DNA of 64,000 nt from Ophelia neglecta. Taxonomy: Eukaryota. The DNA is taken from positions 16,368,001-16,432,000 of the forward strand of contig OZ260667.1 in NCBI GenBank assembly GCA_965285935.1, given 5' to 3'. Positions 5,335 to 58,588 of this stretch are shown here, one piece after another. How positions within the stretch are numbered: position 1 is the stretch's first letter; each line of letters starts with the position of its first letter. Position numbers and translations under genes: made by a program. The notes below the pieces were generated by a model. The model saw nothing but the letters and a program-made list of their open reading frames with translations, did not search any database and had not been told where the DNA came from.

Positions 5335-5564
5335 TCATAGAACGACAATGCCCTGTCTGTATTTACGTTGCTGAAGCAGCTTGTATTCGATGGCACTGTA
5401 GAAAGTAAGGCCCAAAACCAGCAGCCCGCCCATTATATACACCTTGGTGGAGACACACAGGAAGTAGCTGTAGCCGAAGGCGGTGGCGAGGCCTATCGCC
5501 TGGAACATACGGTAACACGCGAACGCTGCCTCCTGGTTCTCGGCAAACAGCACTCCAAACAACG
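5335..5564 (-). CDS. unc-93: UNC-93-like terminal coding exon (TLFGVLFAENQEAAF...QGIVVL*)
   Basis: Polypyrimidine cttcag acceptor; stop at 5335; AATAAA on the minus strand at 5086-5091. Confidence 0.92.
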
Positions 5565-34792: not shown

Positions 34793-34859
34793 ATGGAGTT
34801 TGGCGGTCATCGATTGATCAGTTTGGGATTCCTGTGGTGTTTCATACTCGTTTCCTTTG
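34793..34859 (+). CDS. Gene A exon 1, signal peptide [22 protein letters not shown]
   Basis: ATG in ataATGG context, hydrophobic core, phase-1 donor G|GTAAGC matching the next exon. Confidence 0.65.
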
Positions 34860-37800
34860 GTAAGCCTAAAATTGTTTAATAGTTTTCTCCATATGGAAAT
34901 AAGTTTATAACGCTAACATATATAAAATAATTTGTCATCATTACTAAATACTTTTCGAGCAAGCGATATACCGTTTGCCGTTTCTCCGGCAGTCATTTTG
35001 TACAAATGATTGAGAGGGACAACAGACACTTTGAATGTGTACCTTCTATTCACTTATCTGCCAAATAATAAACGTTTTAAAAGTATTTCTTAAGTTGTTT
35101 GCATGTAAGCCTGCGTCTTACGGGTGTAACATCGATAGGCCTACTTCATATTCGTAAAACATTATAAAAACACTACAAAAAGTCTTATATATCACACCAG
35201 TCAAATATGAACAGATTGAACTTTTTTAAAAAAAACTCCTTTTCACTTTTTACATGAAAGAACTTTATAGCTTGCCAACCCGGTCCAATGATAACTCAAG
35301 TTTGATTATTATATAAACAGATTTATTAAAAAGATAGCCCCGGCAAAACACTGGACAATATTCTAACCACAAATAATAATTATAGCGTTTTGACAAAGGA
35401 TTTGATATTTGCGTTTATATTCCAACACGGTCTACATGCAGCTATCTGCTCGCCTAACGTGCAACATTACGGGAATATTGCTTCACTAACCATGGCATCT
35501 CATCCCAAGTAAAAAAACATGTAATTAGTGCGTTTATTTTATAAGTACATATGTATTCCACTTTCTTCAAACCCAACGACTTGTTTCCGATTAATGAGGT
35601 TAAGCTGACTAAAGATATTTATCATTATTATTATCATAATTATTTTTATCTATAAGCACACAATTTTCGTTTTGTTTCCACCTCGGACAACCACAGCCAT
35701 TAAATGTATATGCCTAATTAATAACCTGTCATACTTGCGATCACACATCCATTGGATTCCCTGGGCGAAGCACATGAGGGAGCTAGTGAAATAAATTACA
35801 GTGGGATATATTTATACAAGAGCGCCAGGCACTGTCTCAGGCACGGCTTTGGTAACCTGCAGCAAAGCAGAAAACCCTTCCTTTGTTTTAAACAAACTAA
35901 AGGTGGATGTTCCACGTTTAAAGGAATTTCTAGTTGTCCTTTTCATCGCATGCGTTAGCCTGTAATCTAATGATACCTCCCCTCCCCCCCCCCCCCCCCC
36001 CCATCAACGCTTAACGACACTTTTAGTACCATTTTGTTGTTGGTTGAGGAATTCTTTAGGGAAAGGGGATAGGGGATATTTAACTATAAGTGCATCTTAA
36101 AAGGTATTGGGCACACTAAGTGGTATAATTGATTCTACATGTACGGGAAAACACTTCATAATTGATTCATGTTTTATACAGTGTTGTCGATGTTTTGGAA
36201 AATACCAAACTATACAAATGGGCAAGGCACACAAAAAACTAGATTTTTCCAGTGAAGAGCTTTCGAGAAAAGTGTTTCGATCGCCAGTGGTAGTTGACTG
36301 TATTTGATCTACCCACGTGCATACGTGTGTATTGTGTGCTGTGTACTTTTGACATAGATATACAGAAATCAGAAAGAAAGAAATTATATAGATCGATGAC
36401 TGTTGTCGTCTGCTCAAGCAAGACCATTACCATTTGATGGTACAGCGCTGTGAAACCGCCCTTTATGGATTTGTGTCGGACAAGGATTTGTTTCTTCCCG
36501 CCGTGTCCTAGTAGCAAAGTAAATAATCAAATGTATTGGCAGCAAAGAGCACATAAATAGGCTAACATTATCTAAATTGCTCAGTGTTGATACAAGATTT
36601 CAAAGTATACATATTTAACGCATAATTATATTTCGCGACAAAACAGCCTCGCGACAGACCTACCTACATGATTTTAGATTTAGAACGGACAAAAATATAG
36701 AGCATTCAATGTTTTCAATTATTGAACTTTCTAATTTCTACTCCCCCGTTCCTAAGTTAGTCCGAAGAATAAAGAGCCAGCCGATAATCTAATTTGTCTG
36801 ATCATAGGATGTTAACAGCTTATAGGAGAAACAGGACAGGATGTGACTTTTCGGCGGAGTGGAGTTGACGCTCTGTGTGCAGATCAATTTATTTATTATC
36901 TTATCAAACCCCATTCTGCTGGGTACACACCTTCAACTCAATCACAAACCCTCCATCCACAGGCTTAAAATATGAAGTATAGCAAACGTGCAATGTAAAT
37001 CAGCCGAACCCACATTTTGCTGTGACTATTAAAGGAATTGCTGTGATCGATATGATTAAATTGATGCACATAGTACACACATGCATAATTAATATGCAAC
37101 AAAGATCTATATATCTGGATCTATATATCTGGTACCTTATCACAGTCTACCTCTTCGTAACGACATTCACGCGATCATGAATATTAAACATGCTCGGTTA
37201 CAAAAAAATTAAATTTGTTCAGCGCGCTTTTGAATTATTTGTTAGTAACAGTTGTTCGCTGGCGACTCTAAGGTTCGTATTGTTTGACTACCAGTGCAAG
37301 CCTATTTCATATGTTCTCCCGCAATACGAGTCTAGTGTTTGACTCTCCTTAGGCAAATTTCATCGTGGTCTCACGTCGAACACTGATAAGTTAGTTTTGT
37401 GATCTTACAACATCAACAATTGTAGACTACTTCTCTAAGCAAGTGATATCAAATGTGATATGTTTATTGCCAATTCCGTAATAAGATAATTTTCAGTTAG
37501 GCATATTTTGCTAACATTAGCCGATGGTTCCTAGTGAAACGACCGTAGTAATTGGCAGTTTATATCAAAATTATATTAAAAGAGTATAAACATTAAAATA
37601 AGACTTAAAAGTGACATTTTTCACTAAACATAATATCGCCATTCCACTTCTGATCATTATATTTTGATTCTGTTATCGGTGATTGTCTGTACATTTATCT
37701 TTCTTTGCAACAAAATTGAATGTCTGGTGGTAGTTGCAGACTTCATTTCTTAATTTTGATAAACTGGGATTTTCCAAAAGAACCGAATGACTGTAAAACT

Positions 37801-40800
37801 GAATGCGACTGGTGTTAATGGGCCTGCAGTTGATGGTTTCCAGAGTTTAGTTTATCTTTCAACGAGTCGCCCCATCCCCCTTACTCCCTTTCCTGCGGGA
37901 ATCACATGAACAGGACTTTCTGCCGATCTATAAACTGCATTGATCTATTTTGATAATAATTAACCAAACAGATCAACACATTGTCTTCCCTTTGCACAGA
38001 ATTGTGCAACGATTTCTGGTCGTATAGATTGCAGCAGATATGAAGAGAGGGATCTTTGTTTATAGTTTGCCGACTTCCATCCAAAAAAATCTGCTTTGTG
38101 GTAATCTTTTTTCCTGATTGGTCGATTCAAGTAATTTGGCGGTAAACACTGTCAGTGGTAGATGGTCTCGGCGTTTTACAAAGATGAAGCAAGTTTCATT
38201 TAGCTGCGCATGCAAAATTGATAAAATACTAAAGTGTCACTGGTAGACGGTCTCGGTGTTTCAGAAAGTTTTAACAAATATCAATTTAGCTGCGCATGCA
38301 AAATTTGATGAACATTAAATGGAAACGTTTACAGTAATAGGTTTACCACGACATCCCTGTAACTTAACACATATCAATTATAAAACAACAAGTACAAACG
38401 AATACATTTGTTTTAAAATTAATTTTCACAGTTTAGCATTGACTAATTGCATGATTTTACCAAATGTGTATTCAATATTCTTAGATTGCAATAGAATGTT
38501 AAAACTATTATACTATTCGATTACAGTTAGTGACACATTCCAAGAAGAGTACTGAGTAATACGTATCATGATTATGCATTTTGACCATATATCTATACGT
38601 ACACGAAATGGGCATTCGTACAAAGTATTTTTACCACTTTTCCCGATAGTTTCTGGCTCGTGCGACCTGACTACAGAGTTTAACTGTACTAACACTAACT
38701 GCGTTCTCCTGGACAAGGTCGACAACTCGGTAAACGACTGTGGGGACAACAGCGACGAAGGTTAGTTAGAAACAACATCAGATACGTGTAGTAGATATCA
38801 GATACGTTAAAAACAGAGCTTCGCTGTTTTTAAAACAATAATTTTTGCAGAGCAAGAAAAATAAAGACACAAGTGTCCCTCGCTCTGTCTAAGATGTTTG
38901 TGTTAAATTATATGACATACCTTTTTCAGCCAGTCACAGGTGTCCGGTGACGACGGATTCCTTCGGTAACACGTTTGATAATTGGCATTGTCTTGACGGT
39001 ACATGTGTGCCCATCATTGTGGGGGTGTTCCCAATACTGGACGGGCAGGCGCAATGCTCAGATAAGTCGGACGAACGTGAGAACAATATCATAGATATTT
39101 ATAAAAGATAATCTAATTTTTCCATCAGTACATGTGCCCAAGCAGGTTCTTTACTATGATCTTTAAACACTGTTTATGTTACAATCGCATGTTACTCTAG
39201 GTAAGATAATCGGCTTATCATGTGCGCGAGTGAACGACGTGTTTCTGCCTAATAACCACTGTAACGACTGGGTGGTGGATTCCGAGTGTCGAGGGATAGG
39301 AGCCTCGCAGATCTGCTACTGTCTGTGGGGGTGGTACCCCAACGCCCTAGGAACCAACTGCACCCGAAGTACGGAGTTAAACTTGAAAAAGGCATTTCAG
39401 TTCAATTACTGGCATAGCAATTTAAAGATCACATTAACTGCGAAATGAGTTTCACATCTATTTAGTGAGAGATATTCTGTATTTTGAAATATTGAAAGAA
39501 AGTCAAGACTGCCGATAACCAAAGATATAATATGTTATGTTATGAAATGGTGTGATATAATTGGGGGTGATTATTGCAGGAATGCTGGGAGATTCATGCC
39601 CGGACACTGCCGAGGACAGAGACTGCTCGGGGTCGGTGCCCGACTCTGAATGTAGGGGCTCTCCATTTGAATGTCTCTGTCGCTATGGCTGGTACCAACT
39701 CAACTATACAACCTGTGTCAAACGTAAGCCCGAAGCATATGCTCATTCGATTTTAATATCCCATTGTTCTATATCAATTATGTAATATTATCTAATATTT
39801 AAAACTTCGTTTGGCTTTCTGTCATTAATTTCCTCGCCATACGATATTAATTAGGCGTAACATAAAAAAAACACGTTTATATTTCAAGGTAAGCTTCACG
39901 ACGGTTGCGCAAACGACATAGATTGTTCCGCAGCTATGGCTGGTAGTAACTGTACCGGAAGTCAGTGTGTATGCAATTCAGGATTTATGGAAGTCGGGCT
40001 TTCCACGTGTTCTCAACGTAAAAATTAACATAAAAGCATCCAACATATTCAAATTGGCATTACCTAAAGTGATGATTACTTGTCATTGTTTTTGTTTTGA
40101 TTTCCTTCAAAGGATTTGATAGATACGTAAGGATTATTTAGATTATACAGATATAAAAAGACCATCATTTTATAAAAAGAAGAATATTTCCTTTTTACTA
40201 GGCGTTATTGGGGACCCCTGTGTGTTAGAAACGGACTGTAGTCACGCCATAAACAACAGTAACTGTGGTAGTGGAGTCTGCGTCTGTGACCTTTGGTATT
40301 TCGCTACCCAAGAAAACACATCTTGTGTCCTTAAACAGATAGGTGACAGTTGTATTACGGACGAGCAGTGTGCCTTCGGGGTGGCCAACAGTACTTGTAA
40401 CAGTGGCTCGTGTGGCTGTGAATCCGGATTTCACAGTCACCCATCTACTCTCAAGGAATGCACTTTGCGGAAAATAGGTGACACCACCTGCAGCCTGGAC
40501 AACGACTGTAGTGACGCTGTTGCTCACAGCAATTGTACTTCCGGTGTATGTGTATGTGAGCCAGGCTACATGGCAACAGATAACAGTACAGTTTGTTCGT
40601 TGAGACGTATATCTGATACATGCTCATCTTTAACGGACTGTTCCCTGGCCATAAACTCCAGTGATTGCAATTCCGGTGTCTGTCAATGCATTTCCGGTTA
40701 CGCGTCATCGGCAGACCTCACGGAATGCATCAAACGCAAGATCGGCGATACCACTTGTAGTATGGCTAGCGACTGTTACGACGCAGTTTCTCATAGCAAC

Positions 40801-43800
40801 TGTACTGGAGGAGTGTGTTTATGTAACATCGGTTACCAAGTAAGCTTGGACAATTCGACATGTATCATAAGAAAGATTGGTGATGCTACCTGCTCCACTG
40901 AATTGGATTGCTCAGCTGCAGTTGCTCAGAGTAACTGCACCAATTCAGTTTGTCAGTGTGTTTTTGGTTTCTCTCAGAACTTAGACAACAGCACTTGTAG
41001 CCAGTACTCAATAGGGGGCAATATTACTTGTGTAGCGGATGTCGAATGTTCGCTGGCGATCTCGAATAGCTTCTGTAATCACACCGGAACCTGTGAGTGC
41101 CTTACTGGTTATTATGTCAGTGGTGGAGGAACAGAGTGTAAGCGATTTACAATCGGTGGTGGAACGTGTATTTCTAATCAAGAGTGCATAGCCGCAGTAC
41201 AAAACAGTTCGTGTGTGTCCGGTTCGTGTGTATGTCATTCTGGGATGTACCCAACATCAGATAACACCACATGTATCCCTCGGTCTATCGGCGATATGTG
41301 CGTAGTGGATGACGACTGCGGGGACTCAATTGCTAGTTCTCTTTGCGTTTCAGGCGTGTGCGCATGCGCATCTGGGTATCTAGAAAACAACAACGGGACA
41401 ATTTGTACAAAACGGAAAATTGGTGACCCCACATGTCTCGTCAAAGCTGATTGTAATGATGCAGTTGAAAACAGTAATTGTACAAGCGGAATTTGCACCT
41501 GCAACTCTGGATACCAAGTGTTGTCAAACAACACCATTTGCCAAATTAGGAAAATAGGAGATGATACGTGTAGGGTTGAAATTGACTGTTCCGCCGCCGT
41601 ACAAAATAGCAACTGTACTGGGGGAGTATGCACTTGTATTGATAATTATTTTGCTAATCCTGATGGTTCTGTGTGTAATAGCTTTATAATAGGAGGAAAT
41701 ATGACTTGTTCCAGCAACTCTCAATGCTCAAATTCTGTGAACAACAGTTTCTGTGATACCGCTTTTTGTCAGTGTCTAAGCGGCTATTATTCCTCTGCAG
41801 GAGGGACACAGTGTCTCAAGCACTCAATAGGCGGCGCTGGCATTTGCATCCAAAATGTCGCTTGCACATCTGTAATAAGCAACAGTCAATGTATCGGTGG
41901 AAATTGTCTGTGCCAGCCCGGTTATCTGACTAATGCAGATAACTCAACCTGCACACTGAGAATCCTGAATGACGCTTGTGTTACTAATTCAGATTGTGAG
42001 GCGGCTGTAACAAACAGTACCTGCCTAAGTGGGACATGTCAATGTAAATCTGGATATCAGAAGAACGCAGGCGGCACGATTTGCACCCTACGTAAAATAG
42101 GGGACACCACGTGTATTTCTGGTGCTGACTGTTTTACTGCCGTCGCTAACAGTCGCTGTCTGTTAGGTGTTTGTGTGTGTCACGATGGGTACAAGGCTAG
42201 CACTGACAACACACAGTGCATAAAGAGGAATATCGGTGACACATGTACAGTTACTACTGGTTGTTCTGCAGCAATTTCTAATAGCGATTGCACTAATGGC
42301 ATATGCGCATGCGTGGCAGGATACCTAGGGAACAACGACGACACGTCATGTAACCGTGTCACAATTAATGGTGCAGTGGCCTGCGCCCTTCAGTCGGATT
42401 GCTCAGATAACATAGACAACAGTATCTGTGACTCGTCTAAGTGTATTTGTCGTACAGGTTTTTACCCAACAAACAGTGCCACCAAATGTACCAAGTTTAC
42501 AATAGGAGAAGGCACATGCGCAAAAGAGATCGACTGTTTGGCAGCCATTGCTGATAGCAATTGCACGTCCGGGACCTGTCAATGCGTGCTAGGGTATCAT
42601 GCAGACGACACAGGCAAAAGGTGCAAAAAGAGAACCTTGGGTGACACCTGTTCCACGAATAATGACTGCTCAGTGGTCATTTCCGGTACATACTGCGCTG
42701 GAGGAGTTTGTACATGCCAAGCCGGATACCAGGAGGATGGCGAAGAATGCTCCAAACGTTTGGTAGGAGATAACTGTACCTTGGTTGTCGATTGCTTAGC
42801 GGCGATAGCCAATAGCAAATGCTCCGATGGAGTATGTTCATGTGCGGAGGGTTTCAGGGTGAGCGTCGACCAGAAGTTTTGTAACAGGAACACCATAGGA
42901 TCGGCGTGTACCACCAACTTAGACTGTCGAATACTGTCAAGCAGTAATTGTACTGGTGGCAACTGTATATGTTACCCAAAGTATGCGAGTAATGAACAAG
43001 GTTCGGCATGTTTAATGTACCCCCTAGGCCACCCATGTACAAGCTCAGATCAATGTGCGGCAACCGTTGCAAGTTCTTCTTGTTCAGAAGGCAGGTGCGC
43101 CTGTAGCCTTGGTTACCTTGTAAGAGGCAGCCAGTGCAACCCCTTAAAAATTGGCGAAGGTTTTTGCACCAGTACGTCTGCCTGTGAGGCGGTGATGTCC
43201 AAAAGTGAATGTCGCAATGGCACATGTCAATGTGTCACAGGTTACAAGGTTGCCGTCAACAACACCAGATGCACCGCCAACAACCTCTCGGACAAATGCA
43301 AGGCAGACAACGATTGCTCAACTGTAGCAAATTCTGTCTGCGCAGGGGGCGTCTGCCAGTGTCACTCAGGCAAGATTAACCATACTTCTAGACTCCTGTC
43401 CACATTCCATATCTCATTTGAAACATCTCTGATTAAAGGAATAGTAAAAAACGAACTATTTGTCATCTAAACAAGAATAAATAAAATCCAAAATCAACAA
43501 ACGTGGCAGAGCTCTATCCTTTAAATTTCAAAGTTAATGATGGAACGACAACAATACTTTTCTCTTGTTTTAATTGTTGAAAATAGCTTTCTCTTGTTAT
43601 GATGTTAAAAATCAAATGAGATTATTACCAAGAAGTGTATTGAAAAACTCTATATAACTTTTCTGTGGAACAATCATATTTTAACAAACTACCAAACAAC
43701 AATACTTGTATCAATACCAACTGCTGATGGCGATTCGATATTCAAATAATATATATTATTTTTGATCAGAATACAAGCAAACAACATCAAACGTCTGTAC

Positions 43801-48100: not shown

Positions 48101-48614
48101 GCGTCCTACGCAAATAAGGATATTGATGAAGTTACAATTGCCGACATAATAAAACGTAGCTGATCAATATTTCTCTAAAGATATCTTAAAATTCTTCCAT
48201 CGAGTTTGCTTGTTGAGACATCCATCGGGTTTGCCAAGACTGGCCTATTGAATTTAAAGCAAAGTTTTCCGTAGTCATGGCGTGAAAGTAAAGTGATCGC
48301 AGATAGCACCTAGGCCTATGCGCAATACGGCCGAGCACATTTTGTGAAATCCAGTAAAGTAATTCATGTGTGATCAGAATAACCACTATGGCTGAACAAA
48401 TAGTGAAAGGAAAGTATCCATTTGGTAATTTTCGATTTTAGAACAATTAATATTCATCGGACCAGTCAGCTGATGTCAACGGAATCATCGTTCTCAGGCG
48501 CAAGCGTGGTTACTTTGGTTAACAGTTAGTGAAACAATTCAACCAAAGATCACCAAATTTGAGTTGATGTGAAGGATGAAACATATACTTTAAGTGGTGA
48601 ATCCAAACAGGAAA

Positions 48615-48720
48615 ATGGATTCAAACTTTAAAAGAAAGAATATGAGTTTAGTTTTAAGGGATACCTGTTTCTTTAGTCTTCCCTTTGTCTTGGTGCTATT
48701 ATTTTGTCTGATCACTAGAG
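48615..48720 (+). CDS. Gene B exon 1, signal peptide (MDSNFKRKNMSLVLRDTCFFSLPFVLVLLFCLITR)
   Basis: Hydrophobic core, G|GTAAGT phase-1 donor; the second Met may be the true start. Confidence 0.75.
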
Positions 48721-51700
48721 GTAAGTCAAATGAGCCTAATTGATAATATTTCTTATTCTATCTTCATTCTATATAACTTGATATATGCATTGGTTAACTT
48801 TATATTAAGGTTGTTCAAAGTTTAGACACTGTCGTTTATGACTAAAAATGTTTTGATTTTATTACACGAATTAGAAGTTTTTAGAGAAGTACATATTCTA
48901 TATATTATAGAAGGAAACTTTTGTTATGATTTTTCTAGTAACATCAGCCACAAGGCTATAGCTAATTTGTATGTTTTGTGTGTTTGGTTTGTAGTTGATG
49001 GTCAATGCAATCCCACAACAGAATTCAACTGTACGAACACAAACTGTATCCCGCTTTCCAAAGTAAACAACACAGTTAATGATTGCGGAGATAACTCTGA
49101 TGAAGGTAGGTTGTAAATAATTAAGCCCTTACCTTTACCGCCAACCTTCTTTAGCAATAGAATTCAAAAGATACGTCATTGTATAAAAGTGACATCAATA
49201 TTGGTTGTTTCATAACAATAATTTCACTCAATATTGACGTTAGTATTTAACTCTTTCTTACTGATACTCTTCTTTCTTAGCTCTATCAACCTGGTGCCCA
49301 AAAGATACCGACGCAAGCGGAACTGAATACTGGCAATTTCATTGCCACTACGGCTTGGACGTGTGTCATGTTATCGTTCCGGGGTTGATTCCCATTCTCG
49401 ATGGCACGCCAGTCTGTGAAGACAAAAGTGATGAAAGTAAGTAAAGATAATCACGGCACTTTGGTCACAGCTAATAGCATATTCGCGGCATTTTTGATGG
49501 TGCGCGTGGTATATATATATAGAGCCTATAACTGTAAATAATTATGACATATATGCTGCCTCTTAATATTTTTTTTTAATTTCAGGAAAAATCGTAGGCT
49601 CTATTTGTAGGCCATTGTTTGATGTGTTTTACGACATCGAGTGTCACGACTGGGTGGCGGATTCGGAATGTGTAGGGGCCCTTGCTGTTCCCCCATTTAC
49701 GCCCGGCATTTGTTACTGTTCTTTGGGATACATGACTAACGATATCTTCACTACCTGTACAAAACGTAAGCAGTTTACAATAGAACACATACTTTATACA
49801 TGTAACACAAACTAGGTGTCGGCCTACTGTTTTTTTTTAACGTTTTATTCATCTTACAAGTTGACGCTCAGAATCAGAAATATTATGTAACCTGTTACTT
49901 AGGTATGTATTTTTCTATATATGATCTTTAAAAGTTATATGAACAATCTAGACTACTGATGATTAGGTTTTCAATAAAATAGAATTGATGTGTCCGAAGT
50001 AAGGGACTCGAACTCGTGTGGTTTCAGCGGCCTCAGGATTATATATTTTTAGGGTTGCCCTGACCTGAACACAAATAAATCTGACCGTGCTTTGATTATT
50101 GTCCCGAGTCAACTAACCAGCGTTATTGCCAGTATGAAATTGTTGTCTGTTGCATGGCCAAGTCAATCAGAAGAGGTGTGATGTGAACTGCATGGGGGTG
50201 CAAGTTCAAAGTCAAATCCTGACCCCATTACCCTAACTTTCGGCGCAGGATGTGCAGCTGTTTCGTGCCTCACTCTAACCCTTCCCTATCTTTCCAAATG
50301 TCAACCTCCACCGGCTCCGCCAGCCCCGCTCATTGTTTGTAGCTCTTTTGAACAGTTAAAATCCTAATTACGTGATGCCCGATTTCAAGACGAGGTCAGA
50401 CGTTACGTATTATATAACAAGCTACGGACGTCACGTATAGCAAGCTATTCACACATAATAGGGATATTGTAAGTAATAATTTATCAGGTCTTAAAAGAGG
50501 ACGATAGGCAACATGGCCTAGGGCATAGCACAAAATGCATGTTTCTGGTGAATTTCTTTCAGAGAAGTTGATATTTCTTGTCCGAATTAGAAAGCCTACA
50601 ATATTGAATTGACAATTCACAGTTTGACCCGTTCAGAATAGTGAAATAAACCATTCGGTTTTCACGATGAGTTAACCCGGCTGTTTACTGAGAGTCCCGG
50701 CTATATATCTGTAACACACGTATCACACGCTGGTGTCATTTCCGGACTGCTATTACTATATGTAGGCCTATAAGCTTACAGGCCTATCTCAAACAAGTGG
50801 TTAAAAGTTTGATTTTCGGCAGTGGTGGCTGCAATGCAGAAAACGCTTGAAACGAACAATATCATACTTTCTCATTTTTCTCATAAACTGTTTGGCTATG
50901 TCGTACCAAGGTGTGTTGGGAGATCCGTGTCCCGACGTAAACTCTGACATCGACTGTACGGCTGCTATCGACCTGTCTGACTGCCGAGGGACCCCCTCCA
51001 CCTGTGAGTGTCAGTACGGATGGTACGCCACCAACTCAACACACTGTGTAAAGCGTGAGTATTAGTACATGTATATGTGGTAAAACTCCTCCCTTTATCC
51101 GCCAAGTAAGCCTGTCAAAGATTTGTAAAGGGACGTTACGGTATTCTATGATTTCGGACAGTTTTAATAGAACGTTTTTGATTAAAGATTTTGCATTTTC
51201 TGCCGAGTATACACTACGGCCTGTCTTGTTTCAGCGACCGGATGCGGGTGATAAAGGCATAAATAGCCGCACCGGTTTCTGATATACATTCGTCTAATTT
51301 TAAAAGTTGACCGATATTATGGGCATTATTGTTAAATAATTGTTTTCACGTGCACCGTACATCCGATTATTTGCCTGGATAGGCTAAGTCGTAACATTAT
51401 AGGCATATTTTACACGATGACTGCGTGATAAGGAAGTACATTTCTTTATATTCATATTTGTGTTTGGTCAGTGTTTAATATGGGATTATGCACTATGACG
51501 TATAATACCACTGTTTATGTTGTAATTGATATATTCAGGTGAGTTACATGACAATTGTACGATCAATCAGGACTGTTACCCGGCGGTTGCTGACAGTAAC
51601 TGCACAAACAACGAGTGTCTGTGTAACTCAGGGTGGATGGAAACCGTTATCACCGACTGCACCAAGAGTAAATAACGCTTTTTATGAGAAAATATGGTCC

Positions 51701-54700
51701 ATATCTAATGGTTTTATAGCTCAATAATATCATATTTAGCTAAAAAATAGTTTAAAGTCTATTGATTGGAACATATATTGCTGGTTTCAAAATTACGTTT
51801 CAATATACGAAATAGATTTGAACATTAGCTAAATGGCCAATGCCTTTTAGTAACGTTAGTATCTCTATATCAGTAAAAAGGTGATATTTTTAAAGTTTTG
51901 TTTTTATATAACTTTTCACAGGAAAAGTAGGAGACAACTGCTCTCTACACACTGACTGCTCTGACGCCGTTGGTGATAGTTTTTGCGACAGTGGTTCCTG
52001 TGCCTGTGTGTACATGCACTTTTCCTCGATTGACAACACCTCGTGTTCGGTAAAGGAGCTGGGAGACTCCTGTACAGCAAGCGACCAATGTACCTTCAAT
52101 GTGGTAAACAGCACGTGTCTGAATGACACGTGTGTTTGTCCGTCAGGGTATTACAACGACCCCCTCACCGCGGACGCCTGCTATATGAGAGAGATTGGGG
52201 ACAACACGTGTACGGTCGATACCGACTGCAGCGACGCGGTCGGCAACAGCAACTGTACTAACGGGACCTGTCTGTGTCTGCCTGGTTTTTACCCTACTGA
52301 TAACAATACTGTATGTACCATTAGAACTCTCAGCGACGCATGCGTGTTAGATACCGACTGTTCGGGTGCCGTCAACGGTAGCGAATGTGTTTCCGGTGTG
52401 TGCCAGTGTATGTCCGGATACGAATTGACTGGAAACGGAACCACGTGTACACGGCGGCAGATAGGAGACGCATCATGTACCATCGAAACGGATTGTAGCG
52501 ACGCAGTGGCCAACAGTAACTGTACAGGCGGCGTCTGTACCTGTAATACCGGTTACCAGGTCAGCCCTGACAACACACACTGTATATTACGAAAAATTGG
52601 AGATTCTACATGTACAACGGAGTTAGACTGTAGCGCTGCGGTAGCCAACAGTAACTGTACGGCGGGAGCGTGCGAGTGTAACCCGGGCTACCTGGCCAGC
52701 CCAGATAATACCACGTGTGACAGGTTTATCATCGGCGGAAACATTAGCTGTGTCAGCGACACTCAGTGTCAGGACTCCGTACCCAACAGTTACTGTACGC
52801 CGGACGGTGTTTGTCAGTGTATTACCGGATATTATGTCAATGATGACGCCACCATGTGTACAGAGTTTACAATAGGCAACGGAGTGTGTACCAACAACAC
52901 GGAATGTGCCACGGCGGTGGGTAACAGCACTTGTGTGAATGGTTCCTGTGAGTGTATATCCGGGTTCTACCCCAGCCCTGACAACAGCTCTTGTATCCTG
53001 AGGACGATAGGGGACGCCTGTGTCGTCGACTCGGACTGTACAGACGCTGTATTGAACGCAGTGTGCATCGCAGGAATCTGTCAATGTGAAAGCGGATATC
53101 AGGTCAATATAAACGGAACAGAGTGCACGCTTCGACAAATCGGAGACGCTTCTTGCAGCACAGAAACGGATTGCAGCGATGCAGTGGCCAATAGTAACTG
53201 TACAGGCGGAGTGTGTGTCTGTAACCCCGGTTACCAGGTCAGTCCTAACAACACCGAGTGCATTTTACGGACCATAGGAGATTCCACATGTACAACGGAG
53301 TTTGACTGTAGCGCTGCAGTAGCCAACAGTAACTGTACGGCGGGAGCGTGCGTGTGTAACCCGGGCTACCTGGTCAGCCCCGACAATACCACGTGTGACA
53401 GGTTTATCATCGGCGGAAACATCAGCTGTGTCAGCGACACTCAGTGTCAGGACTCCGTACCCAACAGCTACTGTACGCCGGACGGCGTATGTCAGTGTAT
53501 TACCGGATATTATGTAAACGATGACGCCACCATGTGTACAGAGTTTACAATAGGCAACGGAGTGTGTACCAACAACACGGAATGTGCCACGGCGGTGGGT
53601 AACAGCACTTGTGTGAACGGTTCTTGTGAGTGTATATCCGGGTTCTACCCCAGCCCTGACAACAGCTCTTGTATCCTGAGGACGATAGGGGACGCCTGTG
53701 TCGTCGACTCGGACTGTACAGACGCTGTATTGAACGCAGTGTGCATCGCAGGAATCTGTCAATGTGAAAGCGGATATCAGGTCAATATAAACGGAACAGA
53801 GTGCACGCTTCGACAAATCGGAGACGCTTCTTGCAGCACAGAAACGGATTGCAGCGATGCAGTGGCCAATAGTAACTGTACAGGCGGAGTGTGTGTCTGT
53901 AACCCCGGTTACCAGGTCAGTCCTAACAACACCGAGTGCATTTTACGGACCATAGGAGAATCCATTTGTACAACGGAGTTAGACTGTAGCGCTGCAGTAG
54001 CCAACAGTAACTGTACGGCGGGAGAGTGCGAGTGTAACCCGGGCTACCTGGTCAGCCCCGACAATACCACGTGTGACAGGTTTATCATCGGCGGAAACAT
54101 CAGCTGTGTCAGCGACACTCAGTGTCAGGACTCCGTACCCAACAGCTACTGTACGCCGGACGGCGTATGTCAGTGTATTACCGGATATTATGTAAACGAT
54201 GACGCCACCATGTGTACAGAGTTTACAATAGGCAACGGAGTGTGTATCAATAACACGGAATGTGCCACGGCGGTGGGTAACAGCACTTGTGTGAACGGTT
54301 CCTGTGAGTGTATATCCGGGTTCTACCCCAGCCCTGACAACAGCTCTTGTATCCTGAGGACGATAGGGGACGCTTGTGTCGTCGACTCGGACTGTACAGA
54401 CGCTGTATTGAACGCAGTGTGCATCGCAGGAATCTGTCAATGTGAAAGCGGATATCAGGTCAATATAAACGGAACAGAGTGCACGCTTCGACAAATCGGA
54501 GACGCTTCTTGTAGTGCCCAGATAGACTGTAGCTCCGCAGTTAACAACAGCGACTGTGTGAACGGTACTTGTGAATGTGAACCTGGGTACCAGGTCAGCC
54601 CGGATAACACCCAGTGTATCCTACGAACCATTGGAACCAGTATCTGCTCGGAGGAGCTTGACTGCTCCGCCGCCGTGGCTAACAGTAACTGTACTAACGG

Positions 54701-57700
54701 CACTTGTAGCTGTCTTGAAGGCTTTTTTGTAAACCCAGATGGCACAGAATGCAACGGATTTGTAATTGGCGGTAACATGACCTGCTTCAACGACACACAA
54801 TGTGCCAACTCTGTGGTTAACAGTTACTGTGATGACACGGGTGAATGTCAGTGCCATCTCGGTTACTACCCCAACAACGAAGGCACGGTCTGTGTCACCT
54901 TCACCGTCGGCGCTCCCGGTATGTGTATAAACGAGACGGACTGCCAGTTGTCGGTAGGTAACAGCACGTGTGTGGCGGGGACGTGCGAATGTCTGCCAGG
55001 CTATCTGGCGAGTGCCGACAACACCACGTGTACCATCCGTACGGTAGGAGATTCCTGTACGGTAGCGGCCGACTGCTCAGCGGCTGTTAACTTCAGTACA
55101 TGTGTTGCCGGTATGTGTGAATGCGAATCCGGCTACCAAACTAGTCTCGATGGCAGTTCATGTGAACTTCGCCAGATAGGAGACGCAAGTTGTGCACTTG
55201 ACACGGATTGTAGCGATGCTGTCGCCAACAGTAACTGTAATAATGGTACGTGCGAATGTAACCCAGGCTTTGTCGTCAGCCCGGACAATACTCAGTGTAT
55301 CCTACGACAGATAGGGGGCGCCATGTGTACTACGGAGCTCGACTGCTCAGCAGCTGTCACCAACAGCAACTGTACTGGTGGGGTGTGTGCTTGTCTCCCG
55401 GGCTATCAAGTGGACGCCACGAATACCATATGTAACCTAATCTCAGTCGGGGGGAACGCCACGTGCGCCAGCGACGCTGATTGTACCGCCTTCATACCAA
55501 ACAGTTACTGCGACGCCAGCGGCGACTGTCAGTGTCTTAACGGACACTACTCCACAAACGGGGGGACCGATTGCACTGCTTACACGATAGGGGGCGGTGG
55601 TGGTTGTACCTTGACCTCTCAGTGTTTGGCAGTTATAAGTAACAGTCAGTGTACAGCAGGGTCTTGTGAATGCGAGCCTGGGTACTATGCTGATCCCACT
55701 AATACCACTTGCACTCAACGTACCATTGGAGACGCGTGTACAGTTGACGCCGATTGTTACAGTGCAGTGCCACATTCGGCCTGTGTTGGGGGGACCTGTC
55801 AGTGTGACACGGGCTATGTACTTAATGGCACCGCTTGTGAACCTCGTGAATTAGGTGACGCCTGCTCCACCAACGCGGACTGTAGTGGAGTAATGACCGG
55901 AAGCGAGTGTGTTGCCGGGGTATGCCAGTGCCAAGTGGGATATACATCGAACGCAGGAAGCACCGGATGTACAATAAACACCGTTAACTCTGCTTGCACC
56001 GTTCCAAATGACTGTATAGCTGTCATCGTTAACTCTAACTGCACCTCTGGATCCTGTTCCTGTAACCCTGGCTTCGCCCCTAACATTGCAGGTACCGCCT
56101 GCTCACTATACCCACTAGGTTCCACCTGCAGTTTATCATCTCAGTGTGCCACAACGACACCTAACTCCGACTGTCCGGCGTCAGGAACCTGCACCTGTAA
56201 ACTTGGATATACCACGAGTAACGGCACGTGTACCCTGCTCACTACCGGCGGTCCGTGTACTTCCTCTGCACAGTGTGCTGCTGCCATGCCCGGAGGAGTG
56301 TGCGTGGCTGGAGTGTGCGTGTGTGGGTCTGGATACCGTCAGGTCGGGACCACTTGCACCGTCAACCAGCCAGGGGATCCATGTGTTGACAATACAGACT
56401 GCGTGGCCATTAATAACAGCATATGTGAGGGCGGGTCATGCAAATGTAAAACAGGTTGGTTTATCATTTTACACAAGATATTGATGCTCGACAACATCCT
56501 TATCAAAATCATATCCGTTGAATTATACCAAGCCATTGTCGTTATCATTTTGAAATTCGCTAAATTTGAATACTTACCCTTTAAACCTTTGTTACATTAG
56601 GTTACGATCAGACGACTTCCGGTCAGTGTACGAAAAAGACGCCTTCCAGCAAATGCGCAGACGACAATGAGTGCGCTGTATTTGGGGGTGTCTGCGGCTC
56701 AGCCGGAAGTTGTGAGTGTCCTGCTGACAAAACTTATACCAACGGAACATGTGGTAGGTTCGCATTTAAACTGTTCAATTATTAAGATTCATCGTGAACA
56801 TTTATTTGAGCGTTAACTGCACGAAGGGATTCCGTGCATTTTTTTCACGTAATCCAGTTGTTTACTCTTGTGTCCGGTTTTTTCAGGGAGTGCTGGGACG
56901 GGTAGTTCGTACGTACCATTTTGGATTCCATTTGGGGCATTTTCTTACCGAAGTTCGGGGGTCGTGCTTAACATAAAGAATCAACTTAGAACTTGATATC
57001 TTTCTCCTTAAGACGTATGTGACAAGCATTAAGAATCCAGCTACATGTATATGATATTGTTGATAACATACTCGACGCTTAATTTTTCAGGTGCGAAAGT
57101 CTGATCTGCAAATATCCATGGATAAGTAAGGATTGATCCATTATTAATCATATCAAAATACAAAAAACGCAATTCGTAACAAAAACCGAAATTTGACTAT
57201 CGTAGCCTTCCGGGGAAATGCATTTGTAAAACATTGTCTATGATTTTCCAAGTACGATATGTCAATAACCTTATGTTTGAAGTCTTTCAGAGGTAAAATG
57301 GTCGTAATTAGTAAGTTTGCGCATGTTTCGTTTTTCAGTTGCACTCATTATCCTGGGCGTGTTGCTTATCGCATTGGCTGCTTTACTCTATTGCTGCAGA
57401 AAACGCCTATGGAAGTTGTGCAAGAGAAGAAAGAAAAAAACGTAACATTTTAAAGATCTATTAAAAATACAAACATTTGATTATGACATTTATTCACTTT
57501 GACCGGTGGAAATATAATCTATCCTTACTTTACGCATATGGGCCTATTATATAGATTTATCAATTTACGTATTTCGCTTACATTCTTAAAAACGTTTTCA
57601 AATAACTTGAAAAAAGTATAAAATGAATCTATAACTTAACTTGTGGCCGTTGAACACCATTGTGTTTGCTTTGCATGTCCGAGGGAAAGCATTCCAGCGT

Positions 57701-58588
57701 CGAAAGCATTCGTTGGATTGTATAACCATTACTGGAATTTTACATTTAAAATTTCTCTGTGACAGGCGTTCGGTCAAGCCTTACTCGGACAAGGACAAAT
57801 TCAAGTTTAACTGGGATAAACAGGCGCCGGGTTCACTTCCGGTCATGTACGAGGCAGCCGAACTCAAGCCCCCGGATGACGTGGATGGTAGGCATAAACA
57901 GGCTCGATGTTCGCGCATCTTGCGACAATGAATACTTTAGGAATAATACTACTTTTAGCATTTACACCAAATGGAAACATTGTGATCCCCTTTGAAACTG
58001 TTTTCGTTGTCCGCATTTTAGCTATGGATGCGTGTACTGTCGCTCTCCGGCCTCCGGGTCTGGGGCCCCCGGTCACTCTTCGGCATGCATTTACCTAAAC
58101 AACTTATCATTATCTAGTTTGCTTGTATGCTGGCAATCTTTTGTTTGTTTTTCATTTCTTGATGTTAGTTTGTATTTGTATACATAATGTTTTTGCACTC
58201 GTAACCCATGCCAAGGAAGTCCAGTATCTACAGCGCCGGTCATTTCTGGCGTCCCGCTAGTTATAATTACCAAATAAAAGGATTCATTTATTCAAAATAA
58301 ATTTTAAGTAATAATAATATTATTACAACTAGCACAATAGACGCCAAAACTATGCTTAAATATAATAAATACTAATGAATGACTTTCGTGTTAAATATAT
58401 TAATTAGAAGTACTAACATATATGGTATACTATGATGTCCGGCCAGTTAACAGTGAAACACACTTTTCCTTTTAATTGCAGGTATTGTATTCAAAGACAG
58501 CAGCTTCTTAAATGGACCGGAAGTTTTCAATGGGACGTCGACATTTTCGCCAGGGAATACTGGAAAATTACCGAAAATTGATAACTAG
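48615..58588 (+). CDS. Paralogue B: type-I membrane protein, SP + 2 LDLa-like + 38 six-Cys EB/EGF-like modules + TM + tail, ~1966 aa; join(48615-48720, 48995-49105, 49281-49436, 49586-49765, 50911-51054, 51539-51667, 51922-56454, 56601-56753, 56887-56908, 57091-57125, 57339-57441, 57766-57887, 58482-58588)
   Basis: Exons sum to 5901 nt, open to TAG at 58586-58588; all introns GT-AG; exon-by-exon homology to gene A. Confidence 0.87.
48995..49105 (+). CDS. Gene B exon 2, LDLa-like module 1
   Basis: [33 protein letters not shown]. Confidence 0.9.
49281..49436 (+). CDS. Gene B exon 3, LDLa-like module 2
   Basis: WCPKDTDASGTEYWQFHCHYGLDVCHVIVPGLIPILDGTPVCEDKSDE. Confidence 0.88.
49586..49765 (+). 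CDS. Gene B exon 4, Cys-rich module
   Basis: KIVGSIC...CHDWVADSEC...ICYCSLGY...TCTK. Confidence 0.88.
50911..51054 (+). CDS. Gene B exon 5, Cys-rich module
   Basis: VLGDPCPD...DC...CRGTPSTCECQYGWY...CVK. Confidence 0.88.
51539..51667 (+). CDS. Gene B exon 6, Cys-rich module
   Basis: ELHDNCTINQDCYPAVADSNCTNNECLCNSGWME...CTK. Confidence 0.88.
51922..56454 (+). CDS. Gene B giant exon 7: 34 tandem six-Cys modules
   Basis: ORF 52008-56600; acceptor ttttcacag| at 51921; donor ACAG|GTTGGT at 56455. Confidence 0.94.
52600..54511 (+). repeat. Near-identical coding tandem repeat, 678-bp period (~2.8 copies), inside gene B exon 7
   Basis: Landmark caggtttatcatcggcgg recurs at 52721, 53399 and 54077. 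Confidence 0.95.
56601..56753 (+). CDS. Gene B exon 8, last Cys module
   Basis: GYDQTTSGQCTKKTPSSKCADDNECAVFGGVCGSAGSCECP...TC. Confidence 0.85.
56887..57125 (+). CDS. Gene B micro-exons 9 (56887-56908) and 10 (57091-57125)
   Basis: GSAGTGSS|CESLICKYPWI; phases 1-2 and 2-1 as in A. Confidence 0.75.
57339..57441 (+). CDS. Gene B exon 11, transmembrane helix
   Basis: IALIILGVLLIALAALLYCC followed by RKRLWKLCKRRKKK. Confidence 0.9.
57766..57887 (+). CDS. Gene B exon 12, cytoplasmic tail
   Basis: RSVKPYSDKDKFKFNWDKQAPGSLPVMYEAAELKPPDDVD. Confidence 0.87.
58482..58588 (+). CDS. Gene B terminal exon
   Basis: GIVFKDSSFLNGPEV...PKIDN*; homologous to the terminal exon of A. Confidence 0.85.

What the first reader, a model, noticed from the sequence alone, without database searches (positions are those of the whole stretch)
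34793..58588. Tandem pair of giant cell-surface receptors of unfamiliar architecture (SP-2xLDLa-like-[6-Cys module]28/38-TM-tail)
Seen: two head-to-tail genes share 13 exons with the same intron phases. They encode ~1500 and ~1966 aa type-I proteins with rod-like ectodomains of ~45-aa six-Cys modules, capped by two degenerate LDLa modules. Known: the module resembles the EB module (PF01683) and EGF-like repeats. The proteins lack the YWTD propellers and NPxY motifs of LDLR/LRP receptors and the Ca-EGF signature of Notch or fibrillin. Inference: an uncharacterised paired-receptor family with a ligand-binding tip on a variable-length stalk, a design seen in immune, allorecognition and gamete-recognition proteins. 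This is the best candidate for an undescribed system here.
Basis: partly seen in the sequence, partly recalled or inferred. Interest (0 to 1): 0.8.

Follow-up and report, generated by a model that had tools for sequence, protein, structure and literature searches.

The report
Tandem LDLa-capped EGF-rod membrane protein genes
Two neighbouring genes in what is probably an annelid genome encode very long, rod-shaped cell-surface proteins of an unstudied family; the closest studied design is the nematode protein MUA-3, which ties skin cells to the cuticle, so the find is real and moderately interesting but not a new kind of system.

Summary
Two head-to-tail genes (34793-45183 and 48642-58588, + strand) each read: signal peptide, two four-cysteine LDLa modules, 28 or 38 EB modules (Pfam PF01683, E 6.5e-80 and 7e-125), membrane helix, and a conserved tail of about 90 residues. 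I find 11 coding exons per gene, not 13, with identical intron phases.

No RNA data exist for this organism. Support for the models comes from intact 3.2 and 4.5 kb exons, purifying selection (dN/dS 0.13 between internal repeat units; 18 silent against 12 replacement variants in the sample's reads) and the same exon layout in Capitella teleta.

"Paired" is not supported. The genome has at least five members with the same tail, carrying 9 to 38 modules, and no activating/inhibitory split. "Unfamiliar architecture" is only partly right. C. elegans MUA-3 also has truncated four-cysteine LDLa modules, a long EGF array and a membrane helix. Mollusc relatives add SEA-like and Ca-EGF modules as MUA-3 does.

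The LDLa tip is the most conserved part, which argues against an allorecognition or immune-diversity role. My best reading is a calcium-dependent tether or adhesion receptor on a rigid glycosylated stalk; the function is inferred. The scan had not reported this family on other DNA.

The parts
34793..34859 (+). Gene A exon 1: start codon and signal peptide ([22 protein letters not shown])
   Evidence: Hydrophobic N-terminus and a phase-1 donor TTG|gtaagc. The 3.8 kb first intron has no RNA support.
38650..38760 (+). Gene A exon 2: LDLa1, the truncated four-Cys type
   Evidence: Pfam PF00057 at 27.7 bits against a cut-off of 24.1. A seven-sequence family profile matches solved LRP2, LDLR and VLDLR LDLa modules. 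Phase 1-1.
38930..39076 (+). Gene A exon 3: LDLa2, four Cys with longer loops
   Evidence: Pfam gives 19 bits, below the cut-off. A six-sequence profile matches VLDLR LDLa modules at E 6.5e-7.
39201..39368 (+). Gene A exon 4: first, divergent EB-like module (EBv1, motif C.DWV.DSEC ... GWY.N..GTNC)
   Evidence: Six Cys, phase 1-1. The same module follows the LDLa cap in the paralogs, in Capitella and in Solemya P0022.
39580..39723 (+). Gene A exon 5: second single-module exon (EBv2)
   Evidence: Six Cys, phase 1-1.
39889..40017 (+). Gene A exon 6: single EB module
   Evidence: Pfam EB at 24.3 bits. Phase 1-1.
40202..43369 (+). Gene A giant exon: 23 complete EB modules plus five-sixths of a 24th; ends at a GC donor (CAG|gcaaga)
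   Evidence: Pfam EB E 6.5e-80 in 18 stretches. 143 Cys and 28 N-x-S/T sequons. The donor was read.
43770..43934 (+). Gene A exon 8: the last Cys of module 27 plus the final EB module
   Evidence: Pfam EB at 25.3 bits. Phase 1-1.
44441..44540 (+). Gene A exon 9: membrane helix (V)[18 protein letters not shown] and a basic stop-transfer stretch
   Evidence: Read. It follows the last Cys directly.
44670..44800 (+). Gene A exon 10: conserved tail motif F.W..RPP....[13 protein letters not shown]
   Evidence: Aligned across five paralogs. The profile finds Capitella CAPTEDRAFT_191510.
45083..45183 (+). Gene A exon 11: tail motif IVFKD.SFL..PEV, C-terminus ...VDS, stop codon
   Evidence: The same motifs occur in paralogs C and D and in contig L021.
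48642..48720 (+). Gene B exon 1: start codon and signal peptide (an alternative ATG lies at 48615)
   Evidence: Donor GAG|gtaagt, phase 1.
48995..49105 (+). Gene B exon 2: LDLa1
   Evidence: Pfam PF00057 at 36 bits, E 8.4e-9. 75% identical to A's LDLa1.
49281..49436 (+). Gene B exon 3: LDLa2
   Evidence: Pfam gives 12 bits only. Supported at profile level.
49586..49765 (+). Gene B exon 4: EBv1
50911..51054 (+). Gene B exon 5: EBv2
51539..51667 (+). Gene B exon 6: single EB module
51922..56454 (+). Gene B giant exon: 33 complete EB modules plus five-sixths of a 34th. It contains a five-module, 678 bp higher-order repeat in five copies (52415-55810).
   Evidence: Pfam EB E 7e-125 in 26 stretches. 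203 Cys and 56 sequons. Repeat spacing is 678, 678, 678, 681 bp. Units 2 and 3 are 98.5% identical; units 1 and 2 give dN/dS 0.13. The AF2 model of one unit has pLDDT 93.
56601..56753 (+). Gene B exon 8: final EB module
   Evidence: Pfam EB at 24.2 bits, against a cut-off of 24.3. Splice sites were read.
57339..57441 (+). Gene B exon 9: membrane helix (V)ALIILGVLLIALAALLY and a basic cluster RKRLWKLCKRRKKK
57766..57887 (+). Gene B exon 10: conserved tail motif
58482..58588 (+). Gene B exon 11: second tail motif, C-terminus ...KIDN, stop codon

Best explanation
Shown: A and B are two intact, selectively constrained genes of a small family that I found only in annelids. This genome has at least five members, and Capitella teleta has an orthologue. 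Each encodes a type I membrane glycoprotein with these parts:
- a signal peptide;
- a tip of two truncated, four-Cys LDLa modules that keep the acidic D-x-S-D-E calcium-cage residues;
- one special first EB module;
- a straight array of EGF-like EB modules (28 in A, 38 in B) carrying 33 and 62 N-glycosylation sequons;
- a membrane helix directly after the last Cys;
- a tail of about 90 residues with conserved motifs.

Inferred: the protein is a non-enzymatic tether or adhesion receptor. The rigid glycosylated rod would hold the conserved LDLa tip about 85-115 nm from the membrane (about 3 nm per EGF-type module). There the tip would bind an extracellular partner in a calcium-dependent way. The conserved tail would couple the protein to a cytoplasmic adaptor or the cytoskeleton.

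The nearest studied design is nematode MUA-3, which links epidermis to the collagenous cuticle. Annelids also have a collagenous cuticle, so anchoring to apical matrix or cuticle is my leading specific guess. Paralogs with 9 to 38 modules would place the same tip at different depths.
For: Evidence that the genes are real:
- The open exons of 3168 and 4533 nt have no stops.
- The exon chain is consistent, mostly phase 1, identical in A and B, and sums to a multiple of three.
- Capitella locus L020 has the same exon boundaries and phases.
- Diverged repeat units give dN/dS 0.13.
- Read variants are 18 silent against 12 replacement, and all four Cys-codon changes are silent.

Domains:
- EB modules.
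- LDLa1 and LDLa2.

Rod:
- The AF2 model of five modules has pLDDT 93.2 and pTM 0.71.
- The best structural matches are EGF arrays of fibrillin, NELL, Pfs25 and EMR2.

Tip and tail:
- LDLa1 is the most conserved exon, 75% between A and B, with 12 invariant columns across seven sequences including Capitella.
- The tail is conserved across five paralogs, Capitella and a second related species.

Precedent:
- MUA-3 has 5 LDLa modules with only four of the six Cys, 52 EGF modules and a membrane helix. It localises to epidermis-cuticle attachments. Its authors estimate about 3 nm per EGF and propose a tether (PMC2150771).
- The C3-to-C5 spacing of 12 residues in LDLa1 here equals that of MUA-3 LA1 in that paper's Table I.
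- Mollusc relatives with the same LDLa cap and EBv1 module carry SEA-like and Ca-EGF modules before the membrane helix, as MUA-3 does.
Against: - There are no expression data of any kind, so tissue and subcellular location are unknown.
- The window's proteins lack the VWA and SEA modules of MUA-3 and MUP-4. Their modules are EB-type, without the calcium-binding EGF consensus (no EGF_CA hit).
- The tail is about 90 residues, has no Pfam hit, and is not the long filaggrin-like tail of MUA-3 or MUP-4.
- Sequence homology to MUA-3 itself was not tested, because I had no reference for its sequence.
- LDLa modules bind many kinds of ligand, so the tip does not point to matrix in particular.
- Tandem duplication and recent repeat expansion would also fit an immune receptor.
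Confidence: 0.4

Rival explanations
1. Scavenger or phagocytic pattern-recognition receptor of blood or coelomic cells, working like Drosophila Eater and NimC1 or mammalian SREC and MEGF10. The LDLa tip would bind polyanionic or polybasic microbial or apoptotic-cell ligands, the EGF-like stalk would present it, and the conserved Tyr-containing tail would trigger uptake or adhesion.
For: - Eater has 32 EGF-like (NIM) repeats, a membrane helix and a short tail with no recognised domain, and it acts in phagocytosis and haemocyte adhesion (PMC4359741; PMC6852320).
- The family sits in tandem clusters, and B shows a recent internal repeat expansion with units 98.5% identical.
- The tail has an invariant M-Y in an acidic context.
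Against: - The tip is the most conserved part, not the most variable.
- The stalk and the alleles are under purifying selection.
- The family is small, with five tail-bearing members.
- By reading, the modules are EB-type, not NIM-type.
- The tail shows no ITAM, ITIM, NPxY or YxxL pair.
- There are no expression data.
Confidence: 0.25
2. Endocytic cargo receptor in the manner of the LDL-receptor family. The LDLa modules would capture a lipoprotein, vitellogenin or protease-inhibitor complex, and the tail would drive internalisation.
For: Genuine LDLa modules with an intact acidic motif. A mollusc relative is auto-named LRP1B-like.
Against: - There are only two LDLa modules, both lacking the third disulfide.
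- There is no YWTD propeller for acid release.
- There is no NPxY or dileucine motif in the tail (direct reading).
- A stalk of about 100 nm is not a feature of endocytic LDLR relatives.
Confidence: 0.1
3. One reading: a recognition system (allorecognition, gamete recognition or paired immune receptors) in which the tip is the specificity determinant.
For: A tandem pair with unequal stalk lengths. About 2% sequence difference between haplotypes in part of B's giant exon.
Against: - LDLa1 is 75% identical between paralogs that are otherwise 39-53% identical, and it is nearly invariant out to Capitella.
- The read variants are mostly silent.
- Both tails are of one type, and the membrane helices have no charged residue.
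- Five members share the design.
Confidence: 0.07
4. The gene models are partly wrong or the genes are not expressed: relics, or exons of differently spliced transcripts.
For: No RNA data. Exon 1 of A lies 3.8 kb upstream. There is one GC donor.
Against: Long intact frames, purifying selection, and conserved exon order and phases in Capitella.
Confidence: 0.08

Closest known systems
C. elegans MUA-3 (and its paralog MUP-4), apical receptors of epidermal attachment complexes (PMC2150771, PMC2150763)
   Same: Type I topology. N-terminal LDLa modules of the truncated four-Cys kind, with the same C3-C5 spacing of 12 in LDLa1. A very long array of EGF-type modules that its authors interpret as a 50-150 nm tether. 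A single membrane helix. A cytoplasmic tail with no recognised domain.
   Different: MUA-3 and MUP-4 have a VWA module and two SEA modules, and their repeats are a Ca-binding EGF variant. The modules here are EB-type with no Ca-EGF consensus, and there is no VWA or SEA. The tail here is about 90 aa with its own motifs, against 223-328 aa and filaggrin-like. Direct sequence homology was not tested.
Uncharacterised mollusc proteins: Mercenaria XP_053372547.1 ('LRP1B-like', P0001), Mya 'fibrillin-3-like' (P0021), Solemya ScPMuIL_013179 (P0022), Aplysia and Physella 'MEGF6' (P0002-P0004)
   Same: Significant similarity over the EB array (E 1e-93 to 1e-146, 31-34% identity). In the bivalve proteins P0001, P0021 and P0022: the same four-Cys LDLa modules (motif NDCGDNSDE), the same special first EB module, and a membrane helix in P0001 and P0021. 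The gastropod proteins (P0002-P0004) show EB but no LDLa in Pfam, and P0003 starts directly with EB modules.
   Different: They insert a SEA-like region and a Ca-binding EGF before the membrane helix, and their tails are unrelated to the annelid tail. None has been studied.
Capitella teleta locus on KB306105.1, including hypothetical protein CAPTEDRAFT_191510 (ELU00192.1)
   Same: The same order (LDLa1, LDLa2, EBv1, EBv2, EB3, large EB exons, membrane helix, tail), the same exon boundaries and phases, and the same tail motifs and ...EVDS C-terminus.
   Different: About 20 or more modules. One extra tail exon. In GenBank it is split into four separate gene calls, so no full-length model is public.
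Drosophila Eater and NimC1 (Nimrod family)
   Same: A single-pass receptor made almost wholly of EGF-like repeats (32 in Eater), with a short tail of unknown function; the repeats are similar to one another (PMC4359741).
   Different: No LDLa cap. NIM-type repeats, not EB. No sequence relationship was shown here.
LDL receptor / LRP family
   Same: LDLa modules with the acidic calcium-binding motif. The family profile matches solved LRP2, LDLR and VLDLR modules.
   Different: Four Cys instead of six. No YWTD propeller, no EGF-precursor unit and no NPxY tail.

Membership tests
EB-module proteins (Pfam PF01683) | Match to the EB HMM above the gathering score | tested here: met
   263.5 bits in 18 stretches for A and 407.5 bits in 26 stretches for B, against a cut-off of 24.3. 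The single-module exons score 24.2-25.3 bits.
LDL receptor family (LDLR/LRP) | Class A modules with six Cys in three disulfides | tested here: not met
   Both modules have four Cys. The fourth is replaced (by Asn/Asp in LDLa1, by a hydrophobic residue in LDLa2) and the module ends at DE, before the sixth. The HMM match itself is met for LDLa1 (27.7 and 36 bits).
LDL receptor family (LDLR/LRP) | YWTD beta-propeller (Ldl_recept_b) with flanking EGF | tested here: not met
   No such hit in any exon at E up to 0.1-1. The in-phase exon chain leaves no room for one.
LDL receptor family (LDLR/LRP) | NPxY internalisation motif in the tail | tested here: not met
   Direct reading of the tail exons.
MUA-3/MUP-4 matrix receptors | Truncated four-Cys LDLa modules at the N-terminus (MUA-3) | tested here: met
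   The same Cys pattern and the same C3-C5 spacing of 12 as MUA-3 LA1 in Table I of PMC2150771.
MUA-3/MUP-4 matrix receptors | Long EGF array, single membrane helix, type I topology | tested here: met
   28 and 38 modules, a signal peptide and one hydrophobic helix. The predicted fold is an EGF-like array.
MUA-3/MUP-4 matrix receptors | VWA module and two SEA modules | tested here: not met
   No VWA or SEA hit. The last Cys abuts the membrane helix. Mollusc relatives give only weak SEA hits of 12.8-17.9 bits, below the cut-off.
MUA-3/MUP-4 matrix receptors | Ca-binding EGF variant with an 8-10 residue insert | tested here: not met
   No EGF_CA hit. The modules lack the D-x-D/N-E-C start.
MUA-3/MUP-4 matrix receptors | Detectable sequence homology to MUA-3 or MUP-4; localisation at epidermis-cuticle attachments | not tested
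   No reference for the MUA-3 sequence was available, and neither protein appeared among the hits (MUA-3 lies outside both length windows, MUP-4 outside that). Localisation needs experiments.
Nimrod family (Eater, NimC1) | NIM repeat consensus (CxPxCxxxCxNGxCxxPxxCxCxxGY, recalled from Kurucz et al. 2007, not from a tool) | tested here: inconclusive
   By reading, the modules lack the CxPxC start and share only the C-x-C-x-x-G-Y part. No NIM profile was available to score.
Paired activating/inhibitory receptors | Similar ectodomains joined to opposite signalling parts (charged membrane-helix residue against an inhibitory tail) | tested here: not met
   The tails of A and B are homologous (about 50% identical), and the membrane helices have no charged residue.

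The most novel reading that the evidence does not exclude
The five paralogs would form a set of molecular rulers. One nearly invariant calcium-binding LDLa tip would be held at fixed, genetically set distances (9, about 20, 28, 32 and 38 modules, roughly 25 to 115 nm) from the apical membrane. They would be the so far unknown annelid counterpart of nematode MUA-3/MUP-4 and fly Dumpy in tying epidermis to a layered collagenous cuticle. The conserved tail (W..RPP....MY.SAE.KEPDD / VFKD.S.L.GPEV / ...VD[SNA] at the C-terminus) would be a new type of cytoskeletal or adaptor link.
Probability: 0.2. Interest if true: 0.6.

Novelty: new variant of a known kind. Interest (0 to 1): 0.35.

Why it matters
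How soft-bodied spiralians fasten their epidermis to the cuticle, chaetae and other apical matrices is poorly known at the molecular level. The only well-studied receptors of this kind are MUA-3 and MUP-4 in nematodes and Dumpy in flies.

This family gives a concrete candidate to test, with an orthologue in the laboratory annelid Capitella. It also links a set of mis-named mollusc genes ('LRP1B-like', 'fibrillin-3-like', 'MEGF6') to one LDLa-capped EB-rod design. If these proteins turn out to be haemocyte receptors instead, they would be an annelid parallel to Eater. Either way, they show stalk length changing by duplication of a five-module unit while the sequence stays under purifying selection.

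Tried and rejected
- RNA evidence. The look-up of sequencing runs returned only three runs of one sample that hold introns as well (share 0.90-0.99), so they are DNA.
- Read laying on B's giant exon gave short unitigs that do not bridge the 678 bp repeat. The copy number of the repeat, and hence the count of 38 modules, rests on the assembly alone. The variants from that call were still useful.
- Tail profile against 1.84 billion representatives. It gave three hits: one spurious CUB-repeat protein (P0018) and two true fragments. The tail therefore looks annelid-restricted or too short to trace further.
- PDB by sequence with the stalk gave only factor Xa EGF2 at E about 0.02.
- Foldseek matches are EGF arrays with low TM-scores, as expected for rods, and name no specific family.
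- The ESM Atlas returned only generic EB, EGF and Dumpy-type clusters at 0.81-0.90.
- Literature. The EB module is called uncharacterised (PMC9679249) or merged with EGF (10.1101/2024.07.08.602367). I found no paper on LDLa plus EB proteins, on 'mua-3-like' genes in spiralians, or on CAPTEDRAFT_191510.
- Pfam on the tail exons and on P0020 gave nothing.
- dN/dS between A and B was not attempted, because at 39-75% protein identity the silent sites are saturated.
- All searches were exon by exon, and protein lengths are sums of exon lengths. This kept me from searching full-length models and from folding the LDLa1-LDLa2-EBv1 head as one piece.

Full report
**What is there**

On the + strand, two giant open exons stand out: 40202-43369 and 51922-56454. 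Around each lies the same set of small open segments.

Using splice-site consensus, reading phase and A/B similarity, I built two parallel chains of 11 coding exons.
- Gene A: 34793-34859, 38650-38760, 38930-39076, 39201-39368, 39580-39723, 39889-40017, 40202-43369, 43770-43934, 44441-44540, 44670-44800, 45083-45183.
- Gene B: 48642-48720, 48995-49105, 49281-49436, 49586-49765, 50911-51054, 51539-51667, 51922-56454, 56601-56753, 57339-57441, 57766-57887, 58482-58588.

Intron phases are 1,1,1,1,1,1,1,1,2,1 in both genes. Every donor is GT except one GC donor after A's giant exon (CAG|gcaaga). Summed exon lengths are multiples of three and give 1476 and 1938 codons.

I find 11 exons, not 13, and slightly shorter proteins. 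Small extra phase-1 exons cannot be excluded without RNA.

Every search was made exon by exon, by reference.

**Domains**

- Pfam scores the giant exons as EB modules (PF01683) at E 6.5e-80 and 7e-125, with secondary cEGF hits. There are no Ldl_recept_b or EGF_CA hits.
- Cutting after every sixth Cys gives 23 and 33 complete modules of 41-47 aa in the giant exons. One module is split by the next intron.
- Exon 2 is an LDLa module above Pfam's cut-off (27.7 and 36 bits). Exon 3 is below it (19 and 12 bits).
- Family profiles of exon 2 (seven sequences) and exon 3 (six sequences) both match solved LDLa modules of LRP2, LDLR and VLDLR. For LA1 the best single stretch scores 36 bits; for LA2 the match is E 6.5e-7.
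- Both modules have four Cys. The fourth Cys of the classical module is replaced and the module ends at D-E, before the sixth. The acidic D..D.SDE residues are kept.
- The last Cys of the ectodomain is followed at once by a hydrophobic helix, then a basic cluster, then about 90 residues of tail with no Pfam hit.
- The ectodomains carry 33 (A) and 62 (B) N-x-S/T sequons.

**Is it real without RNA?**

No RNA run of this organism is available. The three runs found hold introns too, so they are DNA. Four other lines support the models.
1. The frames run for 3.2 and 4.5 kb without stops.
2. B's giant exon holds a five-module, 678 bp higher-order repeat in five copies. Units 2 and 3 are 98.5% identical. 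Unit 1 against unit 2 gives dS 0.31, dN 0.04 and dN/dS 0.13.
3. DNA unitigs of the same sample show 30 variants in this exon. Of these, 18 are silent and 12 are replacements. All four changes in Cys codons are silent.
4. Capitella teleta has a locus with the same order of exons, the same boundaries and the same phase-1 introns.

**The family**

A search of the window's own genome with the tail exon and with LDLa1 found three more members in tandem on another contig (C1, 62.49-62.58 Mb). Each has both LDLa modules, the three single-module exons, a central EB exon, a last EB exon, a membrane helix and the tail-1 motif; the second tail exon was found in C and D but not in E.
- Module numbers are 9, 32 and about 20, against 28 and 38 here.
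- A more distant relative has about six LDLa modules, an EB array and a membrane helix.
- A and B are old duplicates. Best-matching modules are 43-67% identical and the small exons 39-53%. LDLa1 is the exception at 75%.
- Across seven sequences including Capitella, LDLa1 has 12 invariant columns.
- The tail motifs F.W..RPP....VMY.SAE.KEPDD, VFKD.S.L.GPEV and a C-terminal [IV]-D-[SNA] are shared.
- A profile of the first tail exon, run against 1.84 billion representative proteins, found only Capitella CAPTEDRAFT_191510 and a genomic contig of a second related species. The Capitella hit is an unstudied 144-aa fragment holding the membrane helix and the tail.

**Wider relatives**

The EB arrays match mollusc proteins at 31-34% identity (E 1e-93 to 1e-146). 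Their automatic names disagree with one another: LRP1B-like, fibrillin-3-like, MEGF6 and CED-1.
- The bivalve ones (Mercenaria, Mya, Solemya) start with two or three LDLa modules of the same four-Cys kind (motif NDCGDNSDE) and the same special first EB module.
- They then insert a SEA-like region and a Ca-binding EGF before the membrane helix, and their tails are unrelated.
- The LDLa-capped EB rod is therefore an old spiralian design, and the window holds an annelid branch of it.

**Structure**

A five-module unit of B, folded with 17 aligned units, gives pLDDT 93.2 and pTM 0.71. The best PDB matches are EGF arrays (fibrillin, NELL, Pfs25, EMR2, uromodulin) with low TM-scores, as expected for rods. 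By sequence, no solved structure is close. A recent survey of nematode ectodomains likewise treats EB modules as a form of EGF (10.1101/2024.07.08.602367).

**What is known**

- I found no paper on this family.
- The closest characterised design is C. elegans MUA-3. [quoted passage not shown] It sits at epidermis-cuticle attachments and is interpreted as a 50-150 nm tether (PMC2150771). MUP-4 is its paralog (PMC2150763).
- The truncated LDLa type, the head-rod-anchor plan and, in the molluscs, the SEA plus EGF before the membrane helix are shared.
- VWA, SEA, the Ca-EGF repeat type and the long filaggrin-like tail are not found here.
- Homology to MUA-3 itself could not be tested.
- Eater (32 NIM/EGF repeats, membrane helix, short tail; phagocytosis and haemocyte adhesion; PMC4359741) is the other functional analogue.

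**Reading**

Shown: these are real, constrained genes for type I glycoproteins with a conserved LDLa tip, an EGF-like rod of variable length and a conserved tail.

Inferred: the protein is a tether or adhesion receptor. It would hold a calcium-dependent binding tip roughly 85-115 nm from the membrane, at about 3 nm per module, and connect through its tail to a cytoplasmic partner. Matrix or cuticle anchoring is the leading specific guess.

A scavenger or phagocytic role is the main rival. An LDLR-like endocytic role and a recognition-system role are less likely, because the tip is the most conserved part and selection is purifying.

The word 'paired' is not supported: there are five members, one tail type, and no charged residue in the membrane helix.

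**Verdict**

The find is genuine and carefully observed: a new annelid variant of a known kind of protein. The interest is moderate.

Noticed in passing
window 5338-5667 and 23950-25263, minus strand: Exons of an UNC-93-like gene (Pfam PF05978, E 5.8e-18 for the 438-aa open segment at 23950-25263) lie upstream of gene A on the opposite strand.
   Followed up: partly
window 43369/43370: The intron after gene A's giant exon uses a GC donor (CAG|gcaaga). The matching intron in gene B uses GT and is much shorter (146 bp against 400 bp).
   Followed up: partly
G000 C1:62493500-62581499 (L016, L017, L018): Three more family members lie in tandem on the minus strand, with 9, 32 and about 20 EB modules. 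In the third, the large EB exon is split in two by a short gap (intron or frameshift, not resolved).
   Followed up: partly
G000 C1:112582000-112601999 (L019, L022): A more distant relative has about six LDLa modules, the same special first EB module, a long EB array and a membrane helix in the same exon as the last EB modules. No SEA module is present.
   Followed up: partly
G000 C1:112562000-112571999 (L024, minus strand, about 4812-9999 in reverse-complement coordinates): A Kunitz-like open segment is followed by a 1378-aa open frame with 246 Cys in short, regular, antistasin-like repeats. It is a separate, very Cys-rich gene next to the LDLa/EB relative.
   Followed up: no
G000 C5:14.47-15.50 Mb: The LDLa1 query hit more than 40 near-identical LDLa-bearing open frames spaced about 15-35 kb apart, which indicates a large tandem gene array. 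It may be the GRL101-like receptor family noted by other agents.
   Followed up: no
window 55397-56393: Alternative unitigs of the same sample differ from the assembly at about 2% of positions in this part of B's giant exon, which suggests two well-diverged haplotypes.
   Followed up: partly
L020 (Capitella teleta KB306105.1, 289883-311877): In GenBank the Capitella orthologue is split into four separate gene calls (76, 90, 416 and 144 aa), so the public annotation hides the full-length protein.
   Followed up: yes
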